DNA of 64,000 bases. It comes from Haliotis rubra. Taxonomy: Eukaryota. The stretch lies in NCBI RefSeq assembly GCF_003918875.1, contig NW_025767081.1, positions 496,001 through 560,000 of the forward strand. The letters are read 5' to 3'. The position numbers and the translations under genes were made by a program. Positions 3,648-51,525 of this stretch are shown one piece after another (positions within the stretch are counted from its first letter, which is position 1; the number at the start of each line of letters is the position of its first letter). The notes beneath the pieces are model-generated. The model was not told the origin of the DNA and did no database searches. It saw only the letters and a list, made by a program, of their open reading frames with translations.

Positions 3648-5159
3648 CTATTTGGGTAAAGCTGCCCTCCAGCCAGCATGTAGTTGTTTGCTGAATTGAT
3701 CCACCAGGGCGCTGTAGGAGGAATCATAAGCCAGGTTCTTGTTTTCCTGAGGATCGCCATAATGGTCGTACAGTTCCACACCAAACACTTCTGTCCAGTC
3801 CGGCTTGTACACAGGTTGTTGGTTGAATTTAACCCACTCTGTGTATCTGTAATGATCGGTGGTCATGCTGTAGCCCATTTGATCTCCGTTGTATTCATTC
3901 CTCGGATACTGGGAGAACACAGCCTTCTTCCAGTTGGGACTTGCTGGGTTTGTTATCAGAGGTATCAAACTAGTGCCTTCAGTGCAGACAAGAACTTTAG
4001 TGGAGTTTTCTGGACAAAGATTAATAGGAGGTAGACCAGCAGCTTCTACCAGAGTAGGAAACAAATCCACAAACTCAGTGAGTTCTTCAGTCACGATGCC
4101 CTTGTCAGTGAGACCCGGCACATGTACCATCATCGGGGAGTGGGTGGCAAGCTCAAAGTCTGTGTGTTTGCACCACTCACCATGTTCCCCAAGTTGCCAA
4201 CCGTGATCTCCCCAGAAGGAGATGATTGTGTTGTTGGCCAGGCCTTGATTCTCCAGCTCCTGGATAACTCGACCCAGCTCGTAGTCCGTGTAGCTGAGGG
4301 CGCTGTAGTACCCTCTCCTCAAGTTGAGGACAACATCATTTGGGAGTGTGGTGTTGATATCTCCCGAAACGTGTAATCTCTCAATGTCAACATATTCTCT
4401 GAGTTCTGAATAATTGGACCATGCGATTACTGGCATTTTATCAGGAGCGTAGGGGTTCGGTGGAAGACTGATAGACGACAACGGGTACAAGTCAAAGAAC
4501 ATCTGTGGTGCCACAAAAGGAAGGTGAGGTTTGTGGAAACCTTGGGCGATGAAGAAAGGGCGTTCTCCAGATCTGGCCTGAGGGGCTGCTTCTCTAATCA
4601 TGTTGATTGCATAATCTGTATTCTGCATGTCCCAAAGGGAGTTGTTCTTTAGAAGGTCCATCGGCACGCTCAACCAAGTAACTTGTTCCTTGTACACAAA
4701 TTTGTTAACTGTTTTGCCAACATCAAAATATGGGTCTGTCCAGGAGATCGGATCGTTGTAGCCAGAAGCACGTCCTGGATGGAAGATCTTACCCGATCCT
4801 ATCGTCCTGTAGCCATGTTCCTTAAAATACTGAGGGATGGTGGTGAAGTTACCTCCCACATCTCTCCAGTAAGCTTGTAGATCATACACATGGGTTGTGT
4901 CCGGTCTTCGTCCTGTGAGGAGAGATGATCTGCTCGGGGAACACACAGCCTGCTGAACATGGGCTCTCTTCAACAGAAGACTCTTCCGAGCCAAACCATC
5001 AAGATTCGGTGAATGTATCGGAGGGTGGACAGGACTGGGGAAGTCTTTTCCTTCAAAAATGGAGAGTTCTGGCCTCATGTCATCAGCCACCAAAAACAAC
5101 ACATTCATGCGAGCCCGGGCGGCAGTCACCGTCAGCAGCAGAAGAATCACCCTCAGCAT
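3648..5159 (-). CDS. IDS: Iduronate-2-sulfatase-like sulfatase, copy 1 (type A), 503 aa, single exon
   Basis: Signal peptide MLRVILLLLTVTAARA; ADDMRP metal-binding motif; CSPSR formylglycine motif followed by LLTGRRPDTT; GKIFH, GFHKPH, GDHGW. The ATG at 5159 aligns with all paralogs, whereas the upstream ORF extension is not conserved. Family assignment only, orthology not shown. Confidence 0.93.
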   Translation of the reverse strand: MLRVILLLLTVTAARARMNVLFLVADDMRPELSIFEGKDFPSPVHPPIHSPNLDGLARKSLLLKRAHVQQAVCSPSRSSLLTGRRPDTTHVYDLQAYWRDVGGNFTTIPQYFKEHGYRTIGSGKIFHPGRASGYNDPISWTDPYFDVGKTVNKFVYKEQVTWLSVPMDLLKNNSLWDMQNTDYAINMIREAAPQARSGERPFFIAQGFHKPHLPFVAPQMFFDLYPLSSISLPPNPYAPDKMPVIAWSNYSELREYVDIERLHVSGDINTTLPNDVVLNLRRGYYSALSYTDYELGRVIQELENQGLANNTIISFWGDHGWQLGEHGEWCKHTDFELATHSPMMVHVPGLTDKGIVTEELTEFVDLFPTLVEAAGLPPINLCPENSTKVLVCTEGTSLIPLITNPASPNWKKAVFSQYPRNEYNGDQMGYSMTTDHYRYTEWVKFNQQPVYKPDWTEVFGVELYDHYGDPQENKNLAYDSSYSALVDQFSKQLHAGWRAALPK

Positions 5160-5201
5160 TGTAGCGTCAGAATTACATTGTGTTCCAGCTGAGGAGAACG
5201 G

Positions 5202-5261
5202 ATTTATATATTTTCTGGCCTGTGAAGATAGCAGACGATTCTTATCATTTGGAATGTTTGT
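5202..5261 (-). promoter_or_regulatory. Putative core promoter module of copy 1 (forkhead-like TGTTTGT, paired GATA sites, TATATAAAT), conserved upstream of copies 1-9
   Basis: TATATAAAT at 5202-5210 (-), AGATAG at 5226-5231, TGATAA within 5241-5247 (-), TGTTTGT at 5255-5261; similar spacing in paralogs. Motif-level evidence only; a TCTTCACAG|G splice acceptor at 5220 is an alternative reading. Confidence 0.45.
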
Positions 5262-9400: not shown

Positions 9401-9750
9401 TATATGGAGGTATGTTTTTAAACTTTTTAAAGCCAAAGTTTTTAAAATAAATAATTAAAAAAGTCAGGCGTTTTCCTGAAATCATAATGCCATAATGGAT
9501 ACAACCGATGCATATAACCAATGTAATCCACATGAAATATGTAAGCCTATGGTGTTAGGGCCCCATTTTTAACAAAGTCAAAGTATCGCTGAATATTAGT
9601 GATGACAATAAATGTAATCATGCCCTACCCCATGCTCTGCATGAAAAATATATGCATGAAAAATATACCCAAAACCACATATCCAGAGAGCTTTTATATA
9701 TCACATACATCACCATGTGCTCTGAGAAGAGCATATCCTATATTTTCCTT

Positions 9751-11265
9751 CTATTTGGGTAGAGCTGCCCTCCAGCCTGCATGTAGTTGTTTGCTGAGTT
9801 GAGCCACCACAGCACTGTAGGCGGAATCATAAGCCAGGTTCTTATTTTCCTGAGGATCGCCATAATGGTCGTACAGTTCCACACCAAACACTTGGGTCCA
9901 GTCCGGCTTGTACTCAGGTTGTAAGTTGAATTTGACCCATTCCGTGTATCTGTAATGATCGGTGGTTATACTGTAGCCCATTTGATCTCCGTTGTATTCA
10001 TTCCTCGGATACTGGGAGAACACAGCCTTCTTCCAGTTGGGACTTGCTGGGTTTGTTATCAGCGGTATCAAACTAGTGCCTTCAGTGCAGACTAGAACGT
10101 TGGTGGAGTTTTCTGGACAAAGATTAATAGGAGGTAGACCAGCAGCTTCTACCAAAGTAGGAAAAAGATCTACAAACTCGGTGAGTTCTTCAGTCACGAT
10201 GCCCTTGTCTGTGAGACCCGGCACATGTACCATCATAGGGGCATGGGTGGCAAGCTCAAAGTTCGTGTGTTTGCACCACTCACCATGTTCCCCCAGTTGC
10301 CAACCGTGATCTCCCCAGAAGGAGATGATTGTGTTGTTGGCCAGGCCTTGATTCTCCACCTCCTGGATAAGTCGACCCAGCTCGTAGTCCGTGTAGCTGA
10401 GGGCGCTGTAGTACCCTCTCCTCAAGTTGAGGATGACATCATTTGGGAGTGTGGTATTGATGTCTCCCGAAATATGGAATTTCTCAAGGTCAACGTATCC
10501 TGAACGTAGTTCTGAATAATTAGACCATGCAATAACCGGCATTTTATCAGGAGCATAGAGGTTGGGTGGCAGACTGATGGAGGACTCGGGGTACATGTCA
10601 AAGAACATCTGTGGTGCCACAAAGGGAAGATGAGGTTTGAAGAATCCTTGAGCGATGAAAAATGGACGTTCTCCAGATCTAGCCTGGGGGGCTGCTTGTC
10701 TGATCATGTTAACTGCATAATCTGCATTCTGTGTGTCTGCAAGGGAGTTATTCTTTAGAAGGTCCATCGGCACGCTCAACCAAGTAACTTTTTCCTTGTA
10801 AACAAAATTGTCAGCCTCTTTGCCTACATGAAAATATGGGTCGGTCCAGGAGATCGGATCGTTGTAGCCAGAAGCAGTTCCTGGATGGAAAATCTTACCC
10901 GATCCTATCGTTCTGTAGCCATGCTCCTTAAAATACTGAGGGATGGTGGTGAAGTTACCTCCTACATCTCTCCAGTAAGCTTGTAGATCATACACATGGG
11001 TAGTGTCTGGTCTTCGTCCAGTGAGGAGAGATGATCTGCTCGGCGCACACACAGCCTGCTGAACATGGGCTCTCTTTAACAGAAGACTCTTCCGTGCAAG
11101 GGCGTCAAGGTTTGGTGAATGTATCGGAGGATGAACAGGACTGGGGAAGTCTTTTCCTTCAAAAATAGTGAGTTCCGGCCTCATGTCATCTGACACCAGA
11201 AACAACACATTCATGCGAGCCCGGGTGGCAGTAATCGCCAGCAGCAGAAGAGTCAACCTCAGCAT
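9751..11265 (-). CDS. IDS: IDS-like sulfatase, copy 2 (type B), 504 aa
   Basis: Same motifs with CAPSR and GFFKPH variants and a 1-aa insertion (ELRSGY); ATG at 11265 begins the signal peptide MLRLTLLLLAITATRA. Confidence 0.93.
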   Translation of the reverse strand: MLRLTLLLLAITATRARMNVLFLVSDDMRPELTIFEGKDFPSPVHPPIHSPNLDALARKSLLLKRAHVQQAVCAPSRSSLLTGRRPDTTHVYDLQAYWRDVGGNFTTIPQYFKEHGYRTIGSGKIFHPGTASGYNDPISWTDPYFHVGKEADNFVYKEKVTWLSVPMDLLKNNSLADTQNADYAVNMIRQAAPQARSGERPFFIAQGFFKPHLPFVAPQMFFDMYPESSISLPPNLYAPDKMPVIAWSNYSELRSGYVDLEKFHISGDINTTLPNDVILNLRRGYYSALSYTDYELGRLIQEVENQGLANNTIISFWGDHGWQLGEHGEWCKHTNFELATHAPMMVHVPGLTDKGIVTEELTEFVDLFPTLVEAAGLPPINLCPENSTNVLVCTEGTSLIPLITNPASPNWKKAVFSQYPRNEYNGDQMGYSITTDHYRYTEWVKFNLQPEYKPDWTQVFGVELYDHYGDPQENKNLAYDSAYSAVVAQLSKQLHAGWRAALPK

Positions 11266-11692
11266 TATGGCGTCTAAATCACACTGTCTTCCAACTGACG
11301 CGAAATGATTTATATATGTTCTAGCCTGTGAAGATAGCAGACGATTCTTATCATTTGGAATGTTTGTTATGTGCATGTGTGACAACAACACAACAAAAAC
11401 AATGTTACATGGCCCTAAACAGGAGCCGGCATTAACAGAACACTCCTTCGTGCCAGTTCGTGTAGGTTTGGTAAATCCATGGAAGGACAACACGAAGGGA
11501 ACACATTTCTCTTGGATGGAATGACAATCGATGTTAAAAAAACAAAGACATCGGTGCGTCAGACATTGAGGTCAACTAAAGGTTAGTTGAAAGAATTTAG
11601 ATTTTGATAAACGAAATTTTACAAATACTTGGGAACATGCACCTGTGTCTTTATCGTTATATCATGGCATGGCATAAGAACCTTTTGTATCA

Positions 11693-14137: not shown

Positions 14138-15649
14138 CTATTTGGGTAAAGCTGCCCTCCAGCCAGCATGTAGTTGTTTGCTGAATTGAGCCACCAGGGC
14201 GCTGTAGGCGGAATCATAAGCCAGGTTCTTGTTTTCCTGAGGATCGCCATAATGGTCGTACAGTTCCACACCAAACACTTGGGTCCAGTCCGGCTTGTAC
14301 ACAGGTTGTAAGTTGAATTTGACCCACTCTGTGTATCTGTAATGATCGGTGGTCATGCTGTAGCCCATTTGATCTCCGTTGTATTCATTCCTCGGGTACT
14401 GGGAGAATACAGCCTTCTTCCAGTTGGGACTTGCTGGGTTTGTTATCAGCGGTATCAAACTAGTGCCTTCAGTGCAGACTAGAACGTTAGTGGAGTTTTC
14501 TGGACAGAGATTAATGGGAGGTAGACCTGCAGCTTCTACCAGAGTAGGAAAAAGATCCACAAACTCGGTGAGTTCTTCCGTCACGATGCCCTTGTCAGTG
14601 AGACCCGGCACATGTACCATCATCGGGGCGTGCGTGGCAATGTCAAAGTCCGTGTGTTTGCACCACTCACCGTGTTCCCCCAGTTGCCAGCCGTGATCTC
14701 CCCAGAAGGAGATGATTGTATTGTTGTCCAGGCCTTGATTCTCCAGCTCCTGGATAAGTCGTCCCAGTTCGTAGTCTGTGTAGCTGAGGGCGCTGTAGTA
14801 GGCTCTCCTCAAACCGAGGATGACATCGTTTGGGAGTGTGGTGTTGATGTCTCCCGAAATATGTAATTTCTCAATGTCAACGAATTGCCTAAGCTCTGAA
14901 TAATTAGACCATGCAATTACCGGCATCTTATCAGGAGCGTATGGATTGGGTGGGAGATTAATTGAAGACTCAGGGTACATGTCAAAGAACATCTGTGGTG
15001 CCAAAAAGGGAAGATGAGGTTTGTGGAATCCTTGAGCGATGAAAAATGGACGTTCTCCTGATCTAGCCTGAGGGGCTGCTTGTCTGATCATGTTAATTGC
15101 ATAATCTGCATTCTGGGTGTCTTGAAGGGAGTTGTTCTTTAGAAGGTCCATCGGCACATTCAACCAGGTATCATGCTCCTTGATTGCAAACTTGTTTGCT
15201 TGACCTCCTACTTCAAAATATGGCTCAGTCCAGGAAATCGGGTCGTTATAATTAGAAGCATGTCCTGGATGGAAAACCTTTCCAGATCCTATCGTTCTGT
15301 AGCCGTGCTCCTTGAAATACTGAGGGATGGTGGTGAAGTTACCTCCCACATCTCTCCAGTAAGCTTGTAGATCATACACATGGGTAGTGTCTGGTCTTCG
15401 TCCTGTGAGGAGAGATGATCGGCTCGGGGAACACACAGCCTGCTGAACATAGGCTCTCTTTAACAGAAGACTCTTCCGAGCGAGGGCGTCAATGTTGGGT
15501 GAATGTATCGGAGGATGAACAGGACTGGGGAAGTCTTTTCCTTCAAAAATGGTGAGTTCCGGTCTCATGTCATCTGCCACTAAAAACAACACATTCATAC
15601 GAGCCTGGGCGGCAGTCACCGCCAGCAGCAGAAGAGTCACCCTCAACAT
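14138..15649 (-). CDS. IDS: IDS-like sulfatase, copy 3 (type C), 503 aa
   Basis: Intact ORF from MLRVTLLLL; CSPSR, GKVFH, GFHKPH, GDHGW motifs. Confidence 0.93.
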   Translation of the reverse strand: MLRVTLLLLAVTAAQARMNVLFLVADDMRPELTIFEGKDFPSPVHPPIHSPNIDALARKSLLLKRAYVQQAVCSPSRSSLLTGRRPDTTHVYDLQAYWRDVGGNFTTIPQYFKEHGYRTIGSGKVFHPGHASNYNDPISWTEPYFEVGGQANKFAIKEHDTWLNVPMDLLKNNSLQDTQNADYAINMIRQAAPQARSGERPFFIAQGFHKPHLPFLAPQMFFDMYPESSINLPPNPYAPDKMPVIAWSNYSELRQFVDIEKLHISGDINTTLPNDVILGLRRAYYSALSYTDYELGRLIQELENQGLDNNTIISFWGDHGWQLGEHGEWCKHTDFDIATHAPMMVHVPGLTDKGIVTEELTEFVDLFPTLVEAAGLPPINLCPENSTNVLVCTEGTSLIPLITNPASPNWKKAVFSQYPRNEYNGDQMGYSMTTDHYRYTEWVKFNLQPVYKPDWTQVFGVELYDHYGDPQENKNLAYDSAYSALVAQFSKQLHAGWRAALPK

Positions 15650-18785: not shown

Positions 18786-20303
18786 CTATTTGGGTAAAGC
18801 TGCCCTCCAGCCAGCATGTAGTTGTTTGCTGAATTGATCCACAAGGGAGCTGAAGGCGGAATCATAAGCCAGGTTCTTGTTTTCCTGAGGATCGCCATAA
18901 TGGTCGTACAGTTCCACACCAAACACTTCTGTCCAGTCCGGTTTGTACACAGGTTGTAAGTTGAATTTGACCCACTCTGTGTATCTGTAATGATCGGTGG
19001 TCATGCTGTAGCCCATTTGATCTCCGTTGTATTCATTCCTCGGGTACTGGGAGAATACAGCCTTCTTCCAGTTGGGACTTGCTGGGTTTATTATCAGAGG
19101 TATCAAACTAGTGCCTTCAGTGCAGACTAGAACGTCGGTGGAGTTTTCTGGACACAGATTTATAGGAGGTAGACCTGCAGCTTCTACCAGAGTAGGAAAC
19201 AAATCCACAAACTCGGTGAGTTCTTCAGTCACGATGCCCTTGTCAGTGAGACCCGGCATATGTACCATCATAGGGGCGTGCGTGGCGATGTCAAAGTCCG
19301 TGTGTTTGCACCACTCACCATGTTCCCCCAGTTGCCAACCGTGATCTCCCCAGAAGGAGATGATTGTGTTGTTGGCCAGGCCTTGATTCTCCAGCTCCTG
19401 GACTATTCTTCCGAGTTCGTAGTCCGTGTAGCTGAGAGCGCTGTAGTAGGCTCTCCTCTAGTTGAGGATAACATCGTTTGGGAGTGTGGTGTTGATGTCT
19501 CCTGTAACATGTAATTTCTCAATGTCTTCGTAAGCTCCGAGCTCTGTTAAATAATAATTAGACCATGCAATTTCCGGCATCTTATCAGGAGCATATGGGT
19601 TGGCTGGAAGACTGATGGAGGACTCGGGGTACATGTCAAAGAACTTCTGTGGTGCCACAAAGGGAAGATGAGGTTTGTGGAAACCTTGGGCGATGAAGAA
19701 AGGACGTTCTCCAGATCTAGCTTGAGGGGCCGCTTCTCTAATCATTTGAATCGCATGGTCATTATTCTGTGTGTCTTGAAGGGAGTTGTTCTTCAGAACA
19801 TCCATCGGCACATTCAACCAGGAAACATGCTCCTTGTATACAAAATTGTTTGCAAGACCTCCTACTTCAAAATATGGGTCTGTCCAGGAGATCGGGTCGT
19901 TGTCGTTAGAAGCATTTCCAGGGTGGAAAATCTTACCCGAACCTATCGTCCTGTAGCCGTGCTCCTTGAAATACTGAGGGATGGTGGTGAAGTTACCTCC
20001 CACAACTCTCCAGTAAGCTTGTAGATCATACACATGGGTTGTGTCTGGTCTTCGTCCAGTGAGGAGAGATGATCTGCTCGGGGAACACACAGCCTGCTGA
20101 ACATGGGCTCTCTTTAACAGAAGACTCTTCCGAGCGAGGGCGTCAAGGTTGGGTGAATGTATCGGAGGGTGGACAGGACTGGGGAAGTCTTTTCCACCAA
20201 AAATGGAGAGTTCCGGTCTCATGTCATCAGCCACTAAAAACAACACATTCATGCGAGCCTGGGCGGCAGTCACCGCCAGCAGCAGAAGAGTCACCCTCAA
20301 CAT
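18786..20303 (-). pseudogene. IDS: IDS-like sulfatase, copy 4 (type D), with an in-frame nonsense codon
   Basis: The two ORF pieces are in the same frame. TTG(Leu)>TAG at 19458-19460 relative to paralogs; 2-aa insertion (NYYLTEL); a Tc1 element is inserted ~130 bp upstream of the ATG. Confidence 0.85.
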
Positions 20304-27839: not shown

Positions 27840-29351
27840 CTATTTGGGTAAAGCTGCCCTCCAGCCAGCATGTAGTTGTTTGCTGTATTGAGCCACCAGA
27901 GCGCTGTAGGAGGAATCATAAGCCAGGTTCTTGTTTTCCTGAGGATCGCCATAATGGTCGTACAGTTCCACACCAAACACTTGGGTCCAGTCCGGCTTGT
28001 ACACTGGTTGTGGTTTGAACTTGACCCACTCTGTGTATCTGTAATGATCGGTGGTCATGCTGTAGCCCATTTGATCACCGTTGTATTCATTCCTCGGGTA
28101 CTGGGAGAACACAGCCTTCTTCCAGTTGGGACTTGCTGGGTTTGTTATCAGAGGTATCAAACTAGTGCCTTCAGTGCAGACAAGAACTTTAGTGGAGTTC
28201 TCTGGACAAAGATTAATAGGAGGTAGACCTGCAGCTTCTACCAGAGTAGGAAACAGATCCACAAACTCAGTGAGTTCTTCAGTCACGATGCCCTTGTCAG
28301 TGAGACCCGGCACATGTACCATCATAGGGGAGTGGGTGGCTAGCTCAAAGTCCGTGTGTTTGCACCACTCACCGTGTTCACCCAGTTGCCAACCGTGATC
28401 TCCCCAGAAGGAGATGATTGTGTTGTTGTCCAGGCCTTGATTCTCCAGCTCCTGGATAACTCGTCCCAGTTCGTAGTCTGTGTAGCTGAGGGCGCTGTAG
28501 TACCCTCTCCTCAAGTTGAGGATGACATCGTTTGGGAGTGTGGTGTTGATGTCTCCCGAAACGTGTAATCTCTCAATGTCAACATATTCTCTGAGTTCTG
28601 AATAATTAGACCATGCGATTACTGGCATTTTATCAGGAGCGTAGGGGTTCGGTGGGAGACTGATAGACGACAACGGGTACAAGTCAAAGAACATCTGTGG
28701 TGCCACAAAAGGAAGGTGAGGTTTGTGGAAACCTTGGGCGATGAAGAAAGGGCGTTCTCCAGATCTGGCTTGAGGGGCTGCTTTTCTAATCATGTTGATG
28801 GCATAATCTGTATTCTGCATGTCCCAAAGGGAGTTGTTCTTTAGAAGGTCCATTGGCACGCTCAACCAAGTAACTTGTTCCTTGTACACAAATTTGTTAA
28901 CTGTTTTGCCTACTTCAAAATATGGGTCTGTCCAGGAAATCGGGTCGTTGTAGCCAGAAGCACGTCCTGGATGGAAAATCTTACCCGATCCTATCGTTCT
29001 GTAGCCATGTTCCTTGAAATACTGAGGGATGGTGGTGAAGTTCCCACCAACATCTCTCCAGTAAGCTTGTAGATCATACACATGGGTAGTGTCCGGTCTT
29101 CGTCCAGTGAGGAGAGATGATCTGCTCGGGGAACACACAGCCTGCTGAACATGGGCTCTCTTTAAAAGAAGACTCTTCCGAGCGAGAGCATCAAGATTCG
29201 GTGAATGTATCGGAGGGTGGACAGGACTTGGGAAGTCTTTCCCTTCAAAAATGGAGAGTTCCGGCCTCATGTCATCAGCCACCAAAAACAACACATTCAT
29301 ACGAGCCCGGGCGGCAGTCACCGCCAACAGCAGAAGAGTCACCCTCAGCAT
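27840..29351 (-). CDS. IDS: IDS-like sulfatase, copy 5 (type A'), 503 aa
   Basis: Intact ORF with all sulfatase motifs; closest to copy 1 (KTVNKFVYKEQVTW, SLWDMQNTDY). Confidence 0.93.
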   Translation of the reverse strand: MLRVTLLLLAVTAARARMNVLFLVADDMRPELSIFEGKDFPSPVHPPIHSPNLDALARKSLLLKRAHVQQAVCSPSRSSLLTGRRPDTTHVYDLQAYWRDVGGNFTTIPQYFKEHGYRTIGSGKIFHPGRASGYNDPISWTDPYFEVGKTVNKFVYKEQVTWLSVPMDLLKNNSLWDMQNTDYAINMIRKAAPQARSGERPFFIAQGFHKPHLPFVAPQMFFDLYPLSSISLPPNPYAPDKMPVIAWSNYSELREYVDIERLHVSGDINTTLPNDVILNLRRGYYSALSYTDYELGRVIQELENQGLDNNTIISFWGDHGWQLGEHGEWCKHTDFELATHSPMMVHVPGLTDKGIVTEELTEFVDLFPTLVEAAGLPPINLCPENSTKVLVCTEGTSLIPLITNPASPNWKKAVFSQYPRNEYNGDQMGYSMTTDHYRYTEWVKFKPQPVYKPDWTQVFGVELYDHYGDPQENKNLAYDSSYSALVAQYSKQLHAGWRAALPK

Positions 29352-30068
29352 TGTAGCTTCAGAATTACACTGTCTTCACACTGACGAGAACGGATTTATA
29401 TATTTTCTAGCCTGTGAAGATAGCAGACGATTCTTATCATTTGGAATGTTTGTTATGTGCACGTGTGACAAAACACAACAAAAACATGGCTCTAAACAGG
29501 AGCTGGCATTCACAGAAGACTCCTTCGAGCCAGTTCGTGTAGGTCAATCCATGGAAGGATGACACCAAGGGAACACATTTCCCTTAGTCTGAATGACTGT
29601 CGATGTCAAAAACAAATATATCGGTGTGTCAGACATTGAGGTCAGCAAAAGATAGCTTGAAAGAATCTAGATTTTGATAATTATAACAAATACTTGGGAA
29701 CATGCACCTGTGTCTTTATCGTTATATCATGGCATGGCATAAGAACCTTTTGTATCACACAATCAATGTGTTGTGCTTGGCCATAACATGTACAGACTGC
29801 CTATACTGATTGTCTTTAAAATGTATTTATGGTTTTAAGTATATGTGAAATGTAAATGTGAGGGATAACCTGTCATGATTATCTGACGAAACAGATTCTA
29901 CTGGGCGTATTGGCAGAGCAGCAGCGGAAATAGACTGAATCACTGGAAAGCAACGACGACACAAAGGAGTTCGCAAAAACGGTTAACATGTCCTGCTCAA
30001 AGACGAAATATGACTCTTCAGCTGAAAATTTACTTGGATGTTTTCGGTTTCTCAATGTCATCGAACTG

Positions 30069-33720: not shown

Positions 33721-34070
33721 TTATATGGTGGTATGTTTTTAAAGTTTTTAAAGCCAAAGTTTTTAAAATAATAATTAAAAAAGTCAGGCCTTTTCCTGAA
33801 ATCATAATGCCATAATGGATACAACCGATGCATATAACCAATGTAATCCTTATGAAATATGTAAGCCTATGGTGTTAGGGCCCCATTTTTAACAAAGTCA
33901 AAGTATCACTGAATATTAGTGATGACACTAAATGTAATCATGCCCTACCCCATGCTCTGCATGACAAATACATGCATGAAAAATATACCAAAAAACACAT
34001 ATCCAGAGAGCTTTAATATATCACATACATCACCATGTGCTCTGAGAGGAGCATATCCTATATTTTCCTC

Positions 34071-35582
34071 CTATTTGGGTAAAGCTGCCCTCCAGCCTGC
34101 ATGTAGTTGTTTGCTGAGTTGAGCCACCACAGCACTGTAGGCGGAATCATAAGCCAGGTTCTTATTTTCCTGAGGATCGCCATAATGGTCGTACAGTTCC
34201 AAACCAAACACTTCTGTCCAGTCCGGCTTGTACACAGGTTGTAGGTTGAATTTGACCCACTCTGTGTATCTGTAATGATCGGTGGTCATGCTGTAGCCCA
34301 TTTGATCTCCGTTGTATTCATTCCTCGGGTACTGGGAGAACACAGCCTTCTTCCAGTTGGGACTTGCTGGGTTTGTTATCAGAGGTATCAAACTAGTGCC
34401 TTCAGTGCAGACTAGAACGTTGGTGGAGTTTTCTGGACACAGATTTATAGGAGGTAGACCTGCAGCTTCTACCAGAGTAGGAAACAGATCCACAAACTCG
34501 GTGAGTTCTTCAGTGACGATGCCCTTGTCTGTGAGACCCGGCACATGTATCATCATAGGGGCGTGGGTTGCGAGCTCAAAGTCCGTGTGTTTGCACCACT
34601 CACCGTGTTCCCCCAGTTGCCAACCGTGATCTCCCCAGAAGGAGATGATTGTGTTGTTGGCAAGGCCTTGATTCTCCAGCTCCTGGATAACTCGACCCAG
34701 CTCGTAGTCCGTGTAGCTTAGAGCGCTGTAGTACCCTCTCCTCAAGTTGAGGATGACATCGTTTGGGAGTGTGGTATTGATGTCTCCCGAAATATGTAAT
34801 TTCTCAATGTCAACGTATCCTCTGAGCTCTGAATAATTAGACCATGCAATTACCGGCATCTTATCAGGAGCATAGAGGTTGGGTGGCAGATTGATGGAGG
34901 ACTCGGGGTACATGTCAAAGAACATCTGTGGTGCCACAAAGGGAAGATGAGGTTTGAAGAATCCTTGAGCGATGAAAAATGGACGTTCTCCAGATTTAGC
35001 TTGAGGGGCTACTTGTCTGATCATGTTAATGGCATAATCTCCATTCTGTGTGTCTGCAAGGGAGTTGTTCTTTAGAAGGTCCATCGGCACGCTCAACCAA
35101 GTAACTTTTTCCTTGTACACAAATTTGTTAGCCTCTTTGCCTACATGAAAATATGGGTCTGTCCAGGAAATCGGGTCGTTGTAGCCAGAAGCAGGTCCTG
35201 GATGGAAAACCTTACCCGAACCTATCGTTCTGTAGCCGTGCTCCTTAAAATACTGAGGGATGGTGGTGAAGTTACCTCCCACATCTCTCCAGTAAGCTTG
35301 TAGATCATACACATGGGTAGTGTCTGGTCGTCGTCCAGTGAGGAGAGATGATCTGCTCGGGGAACACACAGCCTGCTGAACATGGGCTCTCTTTAACAGA
35401 AGACTCTTCCGAGCGAGGGCATCAAGGTTTGGTGAGTGTATCGGAGGATGAACAGGACTGGGGAAGTCTTTCCCACCAAAAACAGTGAGTTCCGGTCTCA
35501 TGTCATCTGACACCAGAAACAACACATTCATACGGGCCCGGGTGGCAGTAATCGCCAGCAGAAGAAGAGTCAACCTCAGCAT
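34071..35582 (-). CDS. IDS: IDS-like sulfatase, copy 6 (type B'), 503 aa
   Basis: Intact from the ATG at 35582 (MLRLTLLLL); CSPSR; GFFKPH variant shared with copy 2. Confidence 0.93.
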   Translation of the reverse strand: MLRLTLLLLAITATRARMNVLFLVSDDMRPELTVFGGKDFPSPVHPPIHSPNLDALARKSLLLKRAHVQQAVCSPSRSSLLTGRRPDTTHVYDLQAYWRDVGGNFTTIPQYFKEHGYRTIGSGKVFHPGPASGYNDPISWTDPYFHVGKEANKFVYKEKVTWLSVPMDLLKNNSLADTQNGDYAINMIRQVAPQAKSGERPFFIAQGFFKPHLPFVAPQMFFDMYPESSINLPPNLYAPDKMPVIAWSNYSELRGYVDIEKLHISGDINTTLPNDVILNLRRGYYSALSYTDYELGRVIQELENQGLANNTIISFWGDHGWQLGEHGEWCKHTDFELATHAPMMIHVPGLTDKGIVTEELTEFVDLFPTLVEAAGLPPINLCPENSTNVLVCTEGTSLIPLITNPASPNWKKAVFSQYPRNEYNGDQMGYSMTTDHYRYTEWVKFNLQPVYKPDWTEVFGLELYDHYGDPQENKNLAYDSAYSAVVAQLSKQLHAGWRAALPK

Positions 35583-38105: not shown

Positions 38106-39617
38106 CTATTTGGGTAAAGCCGCCCTCCAGCCTGCATGTAGTTGTTTGCTGAGTTGAGCCACCACAGCGCTGTAGGCGGAATCATAAGCCAGGTTCTTGT
38201 TTTCTTGAGGATCGCCATAATGGTCGTACAGTTCCACACCAAACACTTCTGTCCAGTCCGGCTTGTACACAGGTTGAAGGTTGAATTTGACCCACTCTGT
38301 GTATCTGTAATGATCGGTGGTCATGCTGTAGCCCATCTGATCGCCGTTGTATTCATTCCTCGGGTACTGGGAGAATACAGCCTTCTTCCAGTTGGGACTT
38401 GCTGGGTTTGTTATCAGAGGTATCAAACTAGTGCCTTCAGTGCAGACTAGAACGTTGGTGGAGTTTTCTGGACACAGATTTATAGGAGGTAGACCTGCAG
38501 CTTCTACCAGAGTAGGAAACAGATCCACAAACTCGGTGAGTTCTTCAGTCACGATGCCCTTGTCAGTGAGACCCGGCACATGTACCATCATAGGGGCATG
38601 GGTTGCGAGCTCAAAGTCCGTGTGTTTGCACCACTCACCGTGTTCACCAAGTTGCCAACCGTGATCTCCCCAGAAGGAGATGATTGTGTTGTTCGCCAGG
38701 CCTTGATTCTCCAGCTCCTGGATAAGTCGTCCCAGTTCGTAGTCAGTGTAGCTGAGGGCGCTGTAGTACCCTCTCCTCAAGTTGAGAATGACATCGTTTG
38801 GGAGTGTGGTATTGATGTCTCCCGAAATATGTAATTTCTCAATGTCAACGTATCCTCTGAGCTCTGAATAATTAGACCATGCAATTACCGGCATCTTATC
38901 AGGAGCATAGAGGTTGGGTGGGAGATTGATGGAGGACTCGGGGTACATGTCAAAGAACATCTGTGGTGCCACAAAGGGAAGATGAGGTTTGTGGAATCCT
39001 TGGGCGATGAAAAATGGACGTTCTCCTGATCTAGCCTGAGGGGCCGCTTGTCTGATCATGTTAATGGCATAATCTCCATTCTGTGTGTCTGCAAGGGAGT
39101 TGTTCTTTAGAAGGTCCATCGGCACGCTCAACCAAGTGACTTTTTCCTTATATACAAATTCGTTAACTGTTTTGCCTACTTCAAAATATGGCTCAGTCCA
39201 GGAAATCGGGTCGTTGTAGCCAGAAGCAGGTCCTGGATGGAAAACCTTACCCGAACCTATCGTTCTGTAGCCGTGTTCCTTAAAATACTGAGGAATGGTG
39301 GTGAAGTTACCTCCCACATCTCTCCAGTAAGCTTGTAGATCATACACATGGGTAGTGTCCGGTCTTCGTCCTGTGAGGAGAGATGATCTGCTCGGGGAAC
39401 ACACAGCCTGCTGAACATGGGCTCTCTTTAACAGAAGACTCTTCCGAGCGAGGGCGTCAAGGTTTGGTGAATGTATCGGAGGATGAACAGGACTGGGGAA
39501 GTCTTTTCCTTCAAAAACAGTGAGTTCCGGCCTCATGTCATCTGAAACCAGAAACAACACATTCATACGAGCCCAGGCGGTAGTAATCGCCAGCAGCAGA
39601 AAAGTCAACCTCAGCAT
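38106..39617 (-). CDS. IDS: IDS-like sulfatase, copy 7 (mosaic type X), 503 aa
   Basis: Intact ORF with signal peptide and all catalytic motifs. Confidence 0.93.
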   Translation of the reverse strand: MLRLTFLLLAITTAWARMNVLFLVSDDMRPELTVFEGKDFPSPVHPPIHSPNLDALARKSLLLKRAHVQQAVCSPSRSSLLTGRRPDTTHVYDLQAYWRDVGGNFTTIPQYFKEHGYRTIGSGKVFHPGPASGYNDPISWTEPYFEVGKTVNEFVYKEKVTWLSVPMDLLKNNSLADTQNGDYAINMIRQAAPQARSGERPFFIAQGFHKPHLPFVAPQMFFDMYPESSINLPPNLYAPDKMPVIAWSNYSELRGYVDIEKLHISGDINTTLPNDVILNLRRGYYSALSYTDYELGRLIQELENQGLANNTIISFWGDHGWQLGEHGEWCKHTDFELATHAPMMVHVPGLTDKGIVTEELTEFVDLFPTLVEAAGLPPINLCPENSTNVLVCTEGTSLIPLITNPASPNWKKAVFSQYPRNEYNGDQMGYSMTTDHYRYTEWVKFNLQPVYKPDWTEVFGVELYDHYGDPQENKNLAYDSAYSAVVAQLSKQLHAGWRAALPK

Positions 39618-41828: not shown

Positions 41829-43340
41829 CTATTTGGGTAAAACCGCCCTCCAACCTGCATGTAGTTGTTTGCTGAGTTGAGCCACCAGGGTGCTGTAGGC
41901 GGAATCATAAGCCAGGTTCTTGTTTTCTTGAGGATCGCCATAATGGTCGTACAGTTCAACACCAAACACTTGGGTCCAGTCCGGCTTGTACACTGGTTGT
42001 GGGTTGAATTTGACCCATTCCGTGTATCTGTAATGATCGGTGGTCATGCTGTAGCCCATCTGATCACCGTTGTATTCATTTCTCGGGTACTGGGAGAATA
42101 CAGCCTTCTTCCAGTTGGGACTTGCTGGGTTTGTTATCAGAGGTATCAAACTAGTGCCTTCAGTGCAGACTAGAACGTTGGTGGAGTTTTCTGGACACAG
42201 ATTTATAGCAGGTAGACCTGCAGCTTCTACCAGAGTAGGAAACAGATCTACAAACTCGGTGAGTTCTTCAGTCACGATGCCCTTGTCAGTGAGACCCGGC
42301 ACATGTACCATCATAGGGGCATGGGTGGCGAGCTCAAAGTCCGTGTGCTTGCACCACTCACCGTGTTCCCCCAGTTGCCAACCGTGATCTCCCCAGAAGG
42401 AGATGATTGTGTTGTTCGCCAGGCCTTGATTCTCCAGCTCCTGGATAAGTCGTCCCAGTTCGTAGTCAGTGTAGCTGAGGGCGCTGTAGTAGGCTCTCCT
42501 CAAGCCGAGGATGACATCGTTTGGGAGTGTGGTGTTGATGTCTCCCGAAATATGTAATTTCTCAATGTCAACGAATTGCCTAAGCTCTGAATAATTAGAC
42601 CATGCAATTACCGGCATCTTATCAGGAGCGTATGGATTGGGTGGGAGATTGATTGAAGACTCGGGGTACAAGTCAAAGAACATCTGTGGTGCCAAAAAGG
42701 GAAGATGAGGTTTGTGGAATCCTTGAGCGATGAAAAATGGACGTTCTCCAGATATAGCCTGGGGGGCTGCTTGTCTGATCATGTTAATGGCATAATCTGC
42801 ATTCTGGGTGTCTTGAAGGGAGTTGTTCTTTAGAAGATCTATCGACACATTCAACCAGGAAACATGCTCCTTGATTGCAAACTTGTTTGCTGTACCTCCT
42901 ACTTCAAAATATGGGTCAGTCCAGGAAATCGGGTCGTAATAATTAGAAGCATGTCCTGGATGGAAAACCTTTCCAGATCCTATCGTTCTGTAGCCGTGTT
43001 CCTTGAAATACTGAGGGATGGTGGTGAAGTTACCTCCCACATCTCTCCAGTAAGCTTGTAGATCATACACATGGGTAGTGTCCGGTCTTCGTCCTGTGAG
43101 GAGAGATGATCTGCTCGGGGAACACACAGCCTGCTGAACATGGGCTCTCTTTAACAGAAGACTCTTCCGAGCGAGGGCGTCAATGTTGGGTGAATGTATC
43201 GGAGGATGAACAGGACTGGGGAAGTCTTTTCCTTCAAAAATGGTGAGTTCCGGTCTCATGTCATCTGCCACCAAAAACAACACATTCATACGAGCCCGGG
43301 CGGCAGTCACCGCCAGCAGCAGAAGAGTCACCCTCAACAT
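41829..43340 (-). CDS. IDS: IDS-like sulfatase, copy 8 (type C'), 503 aa
   Basis: Intact ORF; closest to copy 3 (ANKFAIKEH, ELRQFVD, VILGLRRA). Confidence 0.93.
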   Translation of the reverse strand: MLRVTLLLLAVTAARARMNVLFLVADDMRPELTIFEGKDFPSPVHPPIHSPNIDALARKSLLLKRAHVQQAVCSPSRSSLLTGRRPDTTHVYDLQAYWRDVGGNFTTIPQYFKEHGYRTIGSGKVFHPGHASNYYDPISWTDPYFEVGGTANKFAIKEHVSWLNVSIDLLKNNSLQDTQNADYAINMIRQAAPQAISGERPFFIAQGFHKPHLPFLAPQMFFDLYPESSINLPPNPYAPDKMPVIAWSNYSELRQFVDIEKLHISGDINTTLPNDVILGLRRAYYSALSYTDYELGRLIQELENQGLANNTIISFWGDHGWQLGEHGEWCKHTDFELATHAPMMVHVPGLTDKGIVTEELTEFVDLFPTLVEAAGLPAINLCPENSTNVLVCTEGTSLIPLITNPASPNWKKAVFSQYPRNEYNGDQMGYSMTTDHYRYTEWVKFNPQPVYKPDWTQVFGVELYDHYGDPQENKNLAYDSAYSTLVAQLSKQLHAGWRAVLPK

Positions 43341-45433: not shown

Positions 45434-46945
45434 CTATTTGGGTAAAGCTGCCCTCCAGCCAGCATGTAGTTGTTTGCTGAATTGAACCACTAGGGCTCTG
45501 TAGGAGGAATCATAAGCCAGATTCTTGTTTTCTTGAGGATCGCCAAAATGGTCGTACAGTTCAACACCAAACACTTGGGTCCAGTCCGGCTTGTACACAG
45601 GTTGTATGTTGAATGTGACCCACTCTGTGTATCTGTAATGATCGGTGGTCATGCTGTAGCCCATTTGATCTCCGTTGTATTCATTCCTCGGGTACTGGGA
45701 GAATACAGCCTTCTTCCAGTTGGGACTTGCTGGGTTTGTTATCAGAGGTATCAAACTAGTGCCTTCAGTGCAGACTAGAACGTTGGTGGAGTTTTCTGGA
45801 CACAGATTAATAGGAGGTAGACCTGCAGCTTCTACCAGAGTAGGAAACAAATCCACAAACTCAGTGAGTTCTTCAGTCACGATGCCCTTGTCAGTGAGAC
45901 CCGGCACATGTATCATCATAGGGGCGTGGGTTGCGAGCTCAAAGTCCGTGTGTTTGCACCACTCACCGTGTTCCCCTAGTTGCCAACCGTGATCTCCCCA
46001 GAAAGAGATGATTGTGTTGTTCGCCAGGCCTTGATTCTCCAGCTCCTGGACTATTCTTCCGAGTTCGTAGTCAGTGTAGCTGAGGGCGCTGTAGTAGGCT
46101 CTCCTCAAATTGATGATGACGTCGTTTGGGAGTGTGGTGTTGATGTCTCCCGTAACATGTAATTTCTCAATGTCAACGTATTCTCTGAGTTCTGAATAAT
46201 TAGACCATGCAATTACCGGCATCTTCTCAGGAGCGTAGAGGTTGGGTGGGAGATTGATGGAGGACTCGGGGTACAAGTCAAAGAACTTCTGTGGTGCCAC
46301 AAAAGGAAGGTGAGGTTTGTGGAAACCTTGGGCGATGAAGAAAGGACGTTCTCCAGATCTGGCTTGAGGGGCTGCTTCTCTGATCATTTGAATCGCATGG
46401 TCATTATTCTGTGTGTCTTGAAGGGAGTTGTTATTAAGAACATCCATTGGCACATTCAACCAGGTAACGAACTCCTTGTATACAAAATAATTGGCTCGAC
46501 CTCCTACTTCAAAATATGGGTCTGTCCAGGAGATCGGGTCGTTGTCGTTAGAAGCATTTCCTGGATGGAAAATCTTACCCGATCCTATCGTTCTGTAGCC
46601 ATGTTCCTTAAAATACTGAGGGAGGGTGGTGAAGTTACCTCCCACAACTCTCCAGTAAGCTTGTAGATCATACACATGGGTTGTGTCTGGTCTTCGTCCT
46701 GTGAGGAGAGATGATCTGCTCGGGGAACACACAGCCTGCTGAACATGGGCTCTCTTTAACAGAAGACTCTTCCGAGCGAGGGCGTCAAGGTTGGGTGAAT
46801 GTATCGGAGGATGTACAGGGGTGGGGAAGTCTTTTCCTTCAAAAATGGTGAGTTCCGGTCTCATGTCATCTGCCACCAAAAACAACACATTCATACGAGC
46901 CCGGGCGGCAGTCACCGCCAGCAGCAGAAGAGTCACCCTCAACAT
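45434..46945 (-). CDS. IDS: IDS-like sulfatase, copy 9 (type D'), 503 aa
   Basis: Intact ORF; closest to copy 4 (WRVVGG, NASNDNDP, QNNDHAIQM). Confidence 0.93.
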   Translation of the reverse strand: MLRVTLLLLAVTAARARMNVLFLVADDMRPELTIFEGKDFPTPVHPPIHSPNLDALARKSLLLKRAHVQQAVCSPSRSSLLTGRRPDTTHVYDLQAYWRVVGGNFTTLPQYFKEHGYRTIGSGKIFHPGNASNDNDPISWTDPYFEVGGRANYFVYKEFVTWLNVPMDVLNNNSLQDTQNNDHAIQMIREAAPQARSGERPFFIAQGFHKPHLPFVAPQKFFDLYPESSINLPPNLYAPEKMPVIAWSNYSELREYVDIEKLHVTGDINTTLPNDVIINLRRAYYSALSYTDYELGRIVQELENQGLANNTIISFWGDHGWQLGEHGEWCKHTDFELATHAPMMIHVPGLTDKGIVTEELTEFVDLFPTLVEAAGLPPINLCPENSTNVLVCTEGTSLIPLITNPASPNWKKAVFSQYPRNEYNGDQMGYSMTTDHYRYTEWVTFNIQPVYKPDWTQVFGVELYDHFGDPQENKNLAYDSSYRALVVQFSKQLHAGWRAALPK

Positions 46946-49980: not shown

Positions 49981-51525
49981 ATGTTCTGGCACCGTTTGAC
50001 CGTCGCGTTGATTCTAGTTGTTGTGCACGTCCATTGCAAACGGAAAAATGTATTATTTCTTGTGGCAGATGACATGAGACCAGATCTGGACGTGTTCAAA
50101 GGAAGAGACTCGCCGTCCCCCGTGAGAGAAAAGGTCCACGCCCCCAATTTGATCTCTTTGACAGGGAGGAGCCTTCTCCTACGTCGTGCCTATGTACAGC
50201 AGGCACTGTGTAGCCCGAGCCGCACCTCCCTCCTGACTGGGCGCCGTCCTGACACCACCCACGTGTACGACCTTGACACTTACTGGAGAAAGGTCGCTGG
50301 CAACTTTACAACATTACCCCAGTACTTTAAAAACCACGGCTACAATACCCTTGGCTTTGGGAAGATCTTCCATCACGGAGACGCATCAGGAAACAATGAT
50401 CCGTTATCATGGTCAGAGCCATACTATGAGACCAAACCAGAGGTGAATGGTTTTGCTACTGATGGGAATTCATGGCGAGCGGTACCTACGAATCTTTTAA
50501 AGAGCAATTCCCTTCAAGACACCATCACTACAAACGTGGCTATTCAGAAGTTGAAGTCCATTGCACCCAAAGCCCGATCTGGACAGGAACCCTTCTTTTT
50601 AGCACTTGGTTATCACAAGCCACATCTTCCATTTGTCTTTCCGGAGAAGTTTCTGAGCTACTACCCAGATGATTCCATTCACCTACCTCCTAATCAGTAT
50701 CCACCTCTGGACATGCCGTCTATTGCTTGGACAAGATACCCCGAGCTGAGGTCATACAAAGACATTGCTCATCTGAATGCATCTGGAGAGCCCAATACAA
50801 CCCTACCAGCTAATGTGGTAAAGGCCCTGAGACGGGCCTACTACAGTTGCATCTCATACATCGACGAGGAACTGGGAAGAGTCTTAACGGAACTGGAACA
50901 GCAAGGGTTGGCAGATGACACAATTATATCCTTCTTTGGGGACCATGGATGGCAGTTAGGTGAACATGGGTTGTGGAGCAAACACACCAACTTCGATGTA
51001 GCTACCCATGCCCCTATGATGCTGCACATACCCGGACTCACCGACCAAGGAATAGTGACAGAAGAGCTTGTGGAATTTGTAGACCTGTTCCCTACACTGG
51101 TTGATGCTGCTGGGCTTCCCACTCTTCAAGTCTGCCCTGAAGATTCCTCAAAGATGGATGTGTGCACAGAAGGACAGAGTTTCCTCCCTTTGATCAAGCA
51201 GCCCAAAACTGATAACTGGAAGAATGCTGCATTTTCTCAGTTTCCTAGACACCAGAATCTTCGTCATCAGATAATGGGGTACTCGATGACGACCGGTCGT
51301 TATCGATACACTGAGTGGGTCGGATTTGACGGTACTCATTACAAACCCCACTGGTCAGCATTGTATGGTGCAGAGCTGTATGACCATTATCAGGATCCAC
51401 AGGAGAACGTCAACCTGGTTCATGAGCCTGCCCACAAGGGCCTGGTGGCCAGGCTCAGTAATCGTCTTCACGCAGGGTGGAGACATGAAGTAACCACTCA
51501 CCAGGGGCCTTCTATTATTGGGTAA
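49981..51525 (+). CDS. IDS: IDS-like sulfatase, copy 10 (divergent paralog), 514 aa
   Basis: Signal peptide, ADDMRP, CSPSR..LLTGRRPDTT, GKIFH, GYHKPH, GDHGW; AATAAA at 51535-51540. Confidence 0.92.
   Translation: MFWHRLTVALILVVVHVHCKRKNVLFLVADDMRPDLDVFKGRDSPSPVREKVHAPNLISLTGRSLLLRRAYVQQALCSPSRTSLLTGRRPDTTHVYDLDTYWRKVAGNFTTLPQYFKNHGYNTLGFGKIFHHGDASGNNDPLSWSEPYYETKPEVNGFATDGNSWRAVPTNLLKSNSLQDTITTNVAIQKLKSIAPKARSGQEPFFLALGYHKPHLPFVFPEKFLSYYPDDSIHLPPNQYPPLDMPSIAWTRYPELRSYKDIAHLNASGEPNTTLPANVVKALRRAYYSCISYIDEELGRVLTELEQQGLADDTIISFFGDHGWQLGEHGLWSKHTNFDVATHAPMMLHIPGLTDQGIVTEELVEFVDLFPTLVDAAGLPTLQVCPEDSSKMDVCTEGQSFLPLIKQPKTDNWKNAAFSQFPRHQNLRHQIMGYSMTTGRYRYTEWVGFDGTHYKPHWSALYGAELYDHYQDPQENVNLVHEPAHKGLVARLSNRLHAGWRHEVTTHQGPSIIG

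What the first reader, a model, noticed from the sequence alone, without database searches (positions are those of the whole stretch)
4610..4785. Hypervariable loops beside active-site residues in an otherwise homogenized protein
Seen: the N-terminal catalytic region and C-terminal ~200 aa are almost invariant in copies 1-9. In contrast, the residue after GKxFH.G is R,T,H,N,R,P,P,H,N,D,K across copies 1-11, and the segment after PYF differs in every copy (DVGKTVNKFVYKEQ, HVGKEADNFVYKEK, EVGGQANKFAIKEH, EVGGLANNFVYKEH, EVGGRANYFVYKEF...). SL[W/A/Q]D and ELR[EY/SGY/QF/GY] also vary. Inference: diversifying selection on substrate-binding subsites with purifying selection or gene conversion on the core, giving a panel of specificities.
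Basis: partly seen in the sequence, partly recalled or inferred. Interest (0 to 1): 0.72.

Follow-up and report, generated by a model that had tools for sequence, protein, structure and literature searches.

The report
Abalone sulfatase copies with variable loops
A blacklip abalone carries a row of near-identical, intron-free sulfate-removing enzyme genes that differ mainly in short loops predicted to hold the sugar substrate, but most of that variation is no faster than neutral drift and only a few codons show a modest signal of selection for change.

Summary
The window is Haliotis rubra. It holds 11 intronless, signal-peptide-bearing iduronate-2-sulfatase-like (SulfAtlas S1_7-type) genes. 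Among copies 1-9, amino-acid variation clusters at codons 125-196 (31/72 variable codons vs 72/431 elsewhere, p=2e-6) and at 252-256.

- **The core.** It is kept by strong purifying selection (about 87% of codons at omega about 0.07; whole-gene dS 0.13-0.39). Gene conversion and unequal crossover add to this (PHI p<0.0005). Between paralog types, dS is 0.51 in the loops and 0.25 elsewhere; within types it is 0.18 vs 0.15.
- **The loop block.** It is under purifying selection overall (omega 0.2-0.3).
- **Neutral-like sites.** About 12% of codons fit omega about 1, including the residue after GKxFHPG (130) and SL[W/A/Q]D (176).
- **Omega above 1.** It is supported for a handful of codons (149, 150, 153, 255, perhaps 159). 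The 9 window copies alone give p=0.14/0.018. With 10 more abalone relatives, p=0.011/1.7e-5. No single site is significant, and the signal is dominated by codons 150 and 447.

By alignment to human IDS, these codons lie in substrate-cleft loops. Distances, expression and substrates were not tested. The scan has already noted the same theme in other sulfatase arrays of this genome. This is an ordinary kind of finding.

The parts
3648..5159 (-). copy c1 (type A), intact 503-aa CDS; variable block codons 125-196 = 4572-4787; codon 130 = 4770-4772; codon 150 = 4710-4712; second loop codons 250-257 = 4389-4412
9751..11265 (-). copy c2 (type B), intact 504-aa CDS; variable block 10678-10893; carries H209F at the position aligned to human H226
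14138..15649 (-). copy c3 (type C), intact CDS; variable block 15062-15277
18786..20303 (-). copy c4 (type D), in-frame TAG at 19458-19460 (TTG in the other copies); 2-codon insertion in the ELR loop; no TATA-like motif found upstream; likely pseudogene
27840..29351 (-). copy c5 (type A), intact CDS; variable block 28764-28979; the copy used for the structure model
34071..35582 (-). copy c6 (type B), intact CDS; variable block 34995-35210; H209F as in c2
38106..39617 (-). copy c7, B/C chimera (upstream flank like c2/c6, downstream flank like c3/c8); loop codons 146-151 identical to type A, a short conversion tract; variable block 39030-39245
41829..43340 (-). copy c8 (type C), intact CDS; variable block 42753-42968
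45434..46945 (-). copy c9 (type D), intact CDS; variable block 46358-46573
49981..51525 (+). copy c10, divergent paralog (dN about 0.32 to c1-c9, dS saturated), intact 514 aa, opposite strand
52514..54042 (-). copy c11, divergent paralog with a 1-nt frameshift in a T run near 53101-53103 (possibly an assembly error)
29393..29405 (-). TATA-like motif AAATATATAAATC 42-54 nt upstream of the c5 ATG; the same motif lies at 5201-5213, 11307-11319, 15689-15701, 35624-35636, 39659-39671, 43382-43394 and 46986-46998 for c1, c2, c3, c6, c7, c8, c9
   Evidence: 8 matches vs 0.48 expected

Best explanation
This is a tandem family of secreted, formylglycine-type S1_7 sulfatases in an algal grazer, evolving by birth-and-death plus concerted evolution.

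Shown:
- A four-gene block (types A-D) was duplicated, and an unequal crossover between a B and a C copy made c7.
- Gene conversion has partly homogenised the 5' and 3' parts of the genes between types.
- Purifying selection holds the catalytic scaffold nearly fixed.
- The central block (codons ~125-196), residues 252-256 and residue 209 keep older, type-specific sequence.
- Within this block most codons are still constrained.
- About an eighth of all codons drift at a neutral-like rate. At a neutral tree length of ~3.8 changes per codon, that alone yields 3-5 states among nine copies.
- A few codons (149, 150, 153, 255, perhaps 159) change somewhat faster than silent sites.

Inferred:
- These segments line the substrate cleft, so the four types probably differ in which sulfated sugar, or which neighbouring sugar, they accept.
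- Selection for those differences resists conversion in the loops.
- The substrate is probably not iduronate-2-sulfate, because three of the four residues that bind it in docked human IDS are replaced.
For: Identity and family:
- Species from protein names and contig.
- Pfam Sulfatase plus SGSH_C.
- Best sequence and fold matches are human IDS 5FQL/6IOZ (TM 0.83-0.84) and the S1_7 ulvan sulfatase 6HHM.
- The CxPxR motif and all catalytic residues are present in all 11 copies.

Array history:
- Downstream flanks pair c1-c5, c2-c6, c3-c8, c4-c9; c7 has B-type upstream and C-type downstream flanks.
- Within-pair dS is 0.13-0.17.

Conversion:
- PHI z about -7.6.
- Parsimony breakpoints beat site permutations.
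- Between-type dS is 0.51 in the loop block vs 0.25 in the rest, while within-type dS is 0.18 vs 0.15.
- c7 codons 146-151 equal type A.

Selection:
- M0 omega is 0.18; M1a puts 86-88% of codons at omega 0.06-0.07.
- 19 abalone sequences with syn-calibrated partition trees: M8a/M8 2dlnL 18.5 (p=1.7e-5); M1a/M2a 9.0 (p=0.011). Sites 149, 150, 153, 255 and 447 have posterior >0.94.
- The result is robust to masking the c7 tract.

Cleft mapping:
- HMMER alignments read against Demydchuk 2017 (PMC5472762).

Family context:
- S1_7 is known to be polyspecific: IDS, kappa-carrageenan 4S, ulvan Xyl2S.
- The same columns are the most variable family-wide.
Against: - Window copies alone give weak tests: M1a/M2a p=0.14 and M8a/M8 p=0.018, with one codon above P 0.95.
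- Per-site tests with a site-specific synonymous rate find no loop codon with beta significantly above alpha (150: p=0.10; 447: alpha 4.7, beta 4.9).
- Dropping codons 150 and 447 leaves M8a/M8 at p=0.025 and M1a/M2a at 0.
- Multi-nucleotide changes and residual micro-conversion can inflate omega.
- The MK-like contrast for the loop block is not significant (p=0.15).
- No coordinates were available, so distances to the active site were not measured. Residue-level equivalence in the indel-rich 146-160 loop is uncertain by about 2 residues.
- No RNA evidence was obtained.
- The codon models are my own implementation, with branch lengths fixed from a simpler model.
Confidence: 0.6

Rival explanations
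1. Neutral loops only. The variable positions are simply the least constrained surface-loop residues of the fold. At dS of 0.3-0.5 between types they have drifted apart. The copies are functionally redundant, serving dosage, and there is no specificity panel.
For: - About 12-13% of codons fit omega=1, including 130, 146, 153, 159, 176 and 255 in the 9-copy analysis.
- The neutral tree length of the loop partition is 3.8 per codon, so 3-5 states are expected without selection.
- FEL shows no significant beta>alpha.
- The sites that vary here are also the highest-entropy, indel-prone columns in 47 distant relatives: mean entropy 2.49 vs 1.00, with sites 150, 255 and 130 ranked 7, 9 and 18 of 503.
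- The LRT is dominated by two codons.
Against: - M8a/M8 p=1.7e-5 and M1a/M2a p=0.011 with 19 sequences.
- The loop block as a whole is constrained within types since the block duplication (omega 0.20; type A 0.07), so it is not free to drift.
- Type-defining residues (130, 133, 149, 164, 176, 178) are kept in both members of most pairs.
- H209F sits at a position aligned to a +1-subsite residue of human IDS.
- The loop block resists the conversion that halved dS elsewhere.
Confidence: 0.3
2. Repertoire-like, pervasive diversifying selection. The loops are under strong, continuing positive selection in every copy, as in immune or venom gene arrays.
For: - Every copy has a different 14-residue string after PYF.
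- Codon 130 has five amino acids with no synonymous change.
- Codon 150 has posterior 0.98-1.0 for omega>1 in all analyses.
Against: - Window-level dN/dS peaks at 0.30.
- Loop-block omega is 0.2-0.3 both within and between types.
- The positively selected class is 0.4-1.7% of codons with omega of 2-4.
- Residue 130 is H in all ten outgroup sequences and fits omega about 1.
- The type A pair differs at two loop residues only.
Confidence: 0.08

Closest known systems
Human iduronate-2-sulfatase (IDS; PDB 5FQL, 6IOZ), SulfAtlas subfamily S1_7
   Same: Best sequence match (E 5e-98; profile E 7e-130) and best fold match (TM 0.83-0.84, 37-38% identity). It shares the same catalytic set (DD, CxPSR, GKxFH, HKPH, GDHG, K). 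It also has the two-subdomain layout with long SD2 strands.
   Different: - Intronless, tandemly arrayed, and secreted-type rather than a single lysosomal gene.
- Residues aligned to the docked-substrate contacts R273, Y348 and K479 are Y/F, H and Q.
- The C171-C184 disulfide is absent.
- The cleft loop is about 8-11 residues shorter.
- So it is probably not an iduronate-2-sulfatase in specificity.
Bacterial S1_7 sulfatases for algal polysaccharides (Formosa agariphila P18_S1_7, ulvan endo-xylose-2-sulfate sulfatase, PDB 6HHM; Zobellia CgsB, kappa-carrageenan 4-sulfatase)
   Same: Same subfamily by sequence and fold (E 1e-63; TM 0.76-0.83). The substrates are sulfated seaweed glycans, which are the abalone's diet. 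The subfamily is documented as polyspecific.
   Different: About 30% identity. They are bacterial and sit in polysaccharide-utilisation loci, not in an animal tandem array. No activity is known for the abalone enzymes.
Other intronless sulfatase arrays of the same genome noted earlier by this scan (ARSB-like arrays; a four-copy IDS-like array)
   Same: The same architecture and the same pattern: a conserved scaffold, variable pocket loops, and signs of copying between copies.
   Different: They lie on different DNA and mostly belong to a different sulfatase subfamily. I did not re-examine them.

Membership tests
Type I (formylglycine-dependent) sulfatase, family S1 | C/S-x-P-x-R formylglycine motif | tested here: met
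   CSPSR (CAPSR in c2) at residues 73-77 in all 11 copies. C73 and R77 are invariant in 50 relatives.
Type I (formylglycine-dependent) sulfatase, family S1 | Metal-binding and catalytic residues (human D45, D46, R88, K135, H138, H229, D334, H335, K347) | tested here: met
   D26, D27, R77, K124, H127, H212, D318, H319 and K331 are present in all copies. Pfam PF00884 E 4e-44.
SulfAtlas subfamily S1_7 | Closest characterised or solved relatives are S1_7 members | tested here: met
   The top three hits by sequence and by fold are 5FQL, 6IOZ and 6HHM, all S1_7. The next hits are far weaker. The SulfAtlas HMMs themselves were not available.
Iduronate-2-sulfatase (EC 3.1.6.13) in the strict sense | Residues that bind 2-sulfo-iduronate in docked human IDS (R273, N167, Y348, K479) | tested here: not met
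   By HMMER alignment, R273 is Y/F256, Y348 is H332 and K479 is Q427. Only N167 may be kept as N152, and the loop alignment there is uncertain.
Iduronate-2-sulfatase (EC 3.1.6.13) in the strict sense | Activity on IdoA-2S substrates | not testable with these tools
   It needs an enzyme assay.
Gene family under diversifying selection at binding sites | dN/dS above 1 at a class of sites after allowing for recombination | tested here: inconclusive
   - 9 window copies: M1a/M2a p=0.14, M8a/M8 p=0.018.
- 19 abalone sequences: p=0.011 and 1.7e-5.
- No site is significant by FEL.
- The signal is dominated by two codons.
Gene family under diversifying selection at binding sites | Selected sites lie at the ligand-binding surface | tested here: inconclusive
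   Alignment places 149-153 in the N167 loop and 255 next to R273. No coordinates were available to measure distances, and the position of 447 (an SD2 hairpin turn) is unknown.
Concerted evolution by gene conversion / unequal crossover | Phylogenetic incongruence along the gene and mosaic copies | tested here: met
   PHI p<0.0005, breakpoints, chimeric c7, region-dependent between-type dS, and species-specific shared residues across paralog groups.

The most novel reading that the evidence does not exclude
The abalone encodes its own array-based panel of S1_7 sulfatases with distinct specificities for sulfated seaweed glycans (carrageenan, ulvan, fucoidan-type). The panel's diversity is maintained because selection keeps the cleft loops (146-161, 209, 252-256) out of the gene conversion that homogenises the rest of each gene. 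That would be an animal counterpart of the sulfatase sets in bacterial polysaccharide-utilisation loci.
Probability: 0.3. Interest if true: 0.6.

Novelty: new member of a known kind. Interest (0 to 1): 0.38.

Why it matters
If the four loop types really differ in substrate, the array would show how a marine herbivore, rather than its gut bacteria, broadens its capacity to desulfate algal polysaccharides. It would also offer natural loop variants for mapping specificity determinants in the large, polyspecific S1_7 subfamily, which includes the human Hunter-syndrome enzyme. As it stands, it is a clear case of purifying selection, gene conversion and loop divergence acting together. The kind is familiar, the genes are already annotated as 'iduronate 2-sulfatase-like', and the same pattern occurs in other sulfatase arrays of this genome.

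Tried and rejected
- **Single-sequence AlphaFold model of c5.** pLDDT was 35.8, unusable. The alignment-based model is good (pLDDT 84, pTM 0.89).
- **Reads.** All runs holding the stretch are genomic contigs, fragmented in the array, and none is on record as RNA. Expression, and the reality of the c4 stop, stay untested.
- **Codon 447.** It scores as positively selected in mixture models but has an equally high synonymous rate (FEL alpha 4.7, beta 4.9). I do not count it.
It falls in the omega=1 class in every analysis. It is H in all ten outgroup sequences.
- **First 19-sequence run.** It gave inflated LRTs (23.6 and 29.2), because the loop region shared branch lengths with the slower N-terminus. 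I replaced it with 7 partitions whose lengths were fitted with partition-specific omega.
- **One M2a fit collapsed to M1a.** This happened with free scale factors. It was refitted with fixed lengths and other starting points.
- **MK-like test of fixed-between-types vs variable-within-types.** Loop block p=0.15, whole gene p=0.010. It is suggestive only and is confounded by conversion.
- **Literature.** I found no paper on abalone IDS-like sulfatases.
- **Bacterial HGT origin.** Not pursued. Relatives at about 60-65% identity occur across molluscs, annelids and sponges.

Full report
**What is there.** The window holds eleven copies of a ~503-codon open reading frame. Nine are close copies on the minus strand (c1-c9) and two are divergent (c10 on the plus strand, c11). 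Tc1/mariner and LINE debris lies between them. Protein searches identify the source as Haliotis rubra scaffold QXJH01000400.1. The products are RefSeq 'iduronate 2-sulfatase-like' proteins.

Each copy has no coding intron and begins with a typical signal peptide. Eight of the nine close copies carry a TATA-like AAATATATAAATC 42-54 nt upstream of the ATG (8 matches vs 0.48 expected). c4 has an in-frame TAG at 19458-19460. c11 has a 1-nt frameshift in a T run.

Just outside the window the array continues with three more copies and then an NRF/EF-hand gene. In H. rufescens, H. cracherodii and H. asinina the same neighbour is followed by only one or two intact copies within 10 kb. In the N-terminal partition tree, c1-c9 plus the adjacent copy form their own clade. 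This looks like an expansion in the H. rubra lineage, or else strong concerted evolution.

**Family.**
- Pfam finds Sulfatase plus SGSH_C.
- The best solved relatives by sequence are human IDS (5FQL, 6IOZ) and the S1_7 ulvan sulfatase 6HHM.
- An alignment-based AlphaFold model (pLDDT 84, pTM 0.89) matches the same three best (TM 0.83-0.84 and 0.76).
- The formylglycine motif and all catalytic residues are present in all eleven copies.
- Three of the four residues that bind docked 2-sulfo-iduronate in human IDS are replaced: R273 by Y/F256, Y348 by H332, K479 by Q427.

I therefore file the genes under S1_7 but not as true iduronate-2-sulfatases. S1_7 is documented as polyspecific: IDS, kappa-carrageenan 4-sulfatase, ulvan xylose-2-sulfatase.

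**Check of the observation.** The finding's coordinates are c1 codons ~125-184.
- Amino-acid-variable codons are concentrated in codons 125-196: 31/72 vs 72/431 (p=2e-6).
- Codons with three or more states are concentrated there too: 9/72 vs 8/431 (p=1.5e-4).
- Synonymous-only variable codons are not enriched (p=0.67).
- Codons 46-124 and 300-445 are depleted of amino-acid change.
- The nine loop strings are all different but fall into four types: A=c1,c5; B=c2,c6,c7; C=c3,c8; D=c4,c9.

**Array history.** Downstream flanks pair exactly by type: c1-c5, c2-c6, c3-c8, c4-c9, at 87-95% identity. c7 has a B-type upstream flank and a C-type downstream flank. Within-pair dS is 0.13-0.17. So a four-gene block was duplicated and c7 arose by unequal crossover. 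The four types are older than that duplication.

**Is the core 'homogenized'?** At the protein level, yes. At silent sites, only partly. Whole-gene dS between copies is 0.13-0.39, with dN/dS 0.07-0.25, so purifying selection does most of the work. Gene conversion is nevertheless clear:
- PHI test: observed 0.347 vs 0.414 +/- 0.009 in permutations.
- An exhaustive-parsimony breakpoint search beats site permutations, with breaks near codons 187, 269, 302 and 451 and different best trees per segment.
- c7 codons 146-151 are identical to type A inside a B-type gene.
- Across species, both paralog groups share species-specific residues in the N-terminal 300 codons.
- Most telling is the dS contrast:

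| Comparison | dS, loop block (125-196) | dS, rest of gene |
|---|---|---|
| Between types | 0.51 | 0.25 |
| Within types | 0.18 | 0.15 |

The mutation rate is therefore even along the gene. The flanks have been copied between types, while the loop block kept its older divergence.

**Is dN/dS above 1 in the loops?**
- As blocks, no. The 30-codon window maximum is 0.30. The loop block has omega 0.29 between types and 0.20 within types.
- I wrote a codon-model likelihood (GY94-type, F3x4, partition-specific trees) because PAML and HyPhy were not available.
- With the nine window copies and five partitions: M1a/M2a 2dlnL 6.6 (p=0.038) and M8a/M8 7.5 (p=0.006). The class is 0.4-0.6% of codons at omega of 6-7.5, and only codon 150 is above 0.95.
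- The loop region has more silent divergence than its partition average. I therefore split the partitions further and fitted branch lengths with partition-specific omega.
- The nine copies then give p=0.14 and p=0.018.
- Adding ten more abalone sequences (three from just outside the window, three H. rufescens, three H. cracherodii, one H. asinina) and calibrating the same way gives M1a/M2a 9.0 (p=0.011) and M8a/M8 18.5 (p=1.7e-5). Omega is about 2.2 for 1.7% of codons. Posteriors above 0.94 fall on 149, 150, 153, 255 and 447; codon 15 has 0.90 and codon 159 has 0.78.
- Masking the c7 conversion tract changes little. Dropping codons 150 and 447 leaves p=0.025 and 1.
- Per-site tests with a free synonymous rate find no loop codon significant (150: beta 3.4 vs alpha 0.7, p=0.10). 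Codon 447 is fast at silent sites too.
- The neutral tree length of the loop partition among the nine copies is 3.8 changes per codon. An unconstrained codon is therefore expected to show three to five states. 'Different in every copy' is what relaxed constraint alone would give.

**Where the variable sites lie.** By HMMER alignment to 5FQL, single-sequence and profile, read against the IDS structure paper (PMC5472762):

| Abalone residues | Human IDS equivalent | Note from the IDS paper |
|---|---|---|
| 149-153 | Loop holding N167 | N167 H-bonds the docked sugar |
| 252 | D269 | Flexible cleft residue |
| 255/256 | Q272/R273 | R273 H-bonds the docked sugar |
| 209 (H; F in c2 and c6) | H226 | +1 subsite contact |
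| 130 | I141 | Three residues after catalytic H138 |

- The loop differs in length from human IDS, so residue-level equivalence around 146-160 is uncertain by about two positions.
- No coordinates were available, so no distances were measured.
- In 47 distant relatives the same columns are the most variable and indel-prone: entropy 2.49 vs 1.00, with sites 150, 255 and 130 ranked 7, 9 and 18 of 503. This fits either specificity loops or simply weakly constrained loops.

**Verdict.** The mechanism I think most likely (confidence 0.6) has three parts. Purifying selection and gene conversion keep the scaffold alike. The cleft-loop block retains old, type-specific sequence and is itself mostly constrained. 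A few codons (149, 150, 153, 255) carry a modest signal of selection for change.

This fits four paralog types tuned to different sulfated seaweed sugars. Pure neutral drift of weakly constrained loops remains a serious rival (0.3). Strong repertoire-like diversification is disfavoured (0.08). Expression and substrates are untested.

The scan has already reported the same pattern in other sulfatase arrays of this genome, including a four-copy IDS-like array. I found no published account of abalone IDS-like arrays. I rate it a new member of a known kind, of moderate-to-low interest.

Noticed in passing
window 38106-39617 with flanks 36600-41100: c7 is a B/C chimera. Its upstream 1.5 kb matches c2/c6 and its downstream 1.5 kb matches c3/c8. 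This explains the extra copy in the second (A,B,C,D) block as an unequal crossover.
   Followed up: partly
window 18786-20303 and 27840-29351: RefSeq protein XP_046579998.1 equals c5 residues 1 to ~307 joined to the C-terminus of c4. This is a chimeric gene model that jumps ~8 kb and avoids c4's in-frame TAG.
   Followed up: partly
window ~53101-53103; L002 ~18205 and ~14800: All three frameshifts in array copies (c11 and the two copies just outside the window) sit in homopolymer runs (T5, G4-5). They may be assembly errors rather than pseudogenes.
   Followed up: no
window 9066-9533 and 33408-33833: Near-identical ORF fragments that look like a LINE-type endonuclease (not scanned against any family library) lie downstream of c2 and c6. 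The insertion therefore predates the block duplication.
   Followed up: no
window 6118-6802, 16543-17465, 20686-21642, 22303-22906, 24396-25049: ORFs that look like Tc1/mariner-type transposase remnants (not scanned against any family library) lie between the sulfatase copies. A very high-copy repeat at about 40353-40714 shows extreme depth in all four genomic runs.
   Followed up: no
window 54250-54912 and 60000-62000: A CT-rich low-complexity tract gives long (SL)n ORFs. Strong GC-skew excursions occur here (+0.23 at 54-56 kb, -0.35 at 60-62 kb). Neither was examined.
   Followed up: no
L001 1745-3370; L004 1527-2593: H. rufescens and H. cracherodii each have a degraded third copy beyond their two intact NRF-proximal copies. 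This indicates birth-and-death turnover of the array in other abalones.
   Followed up: partly
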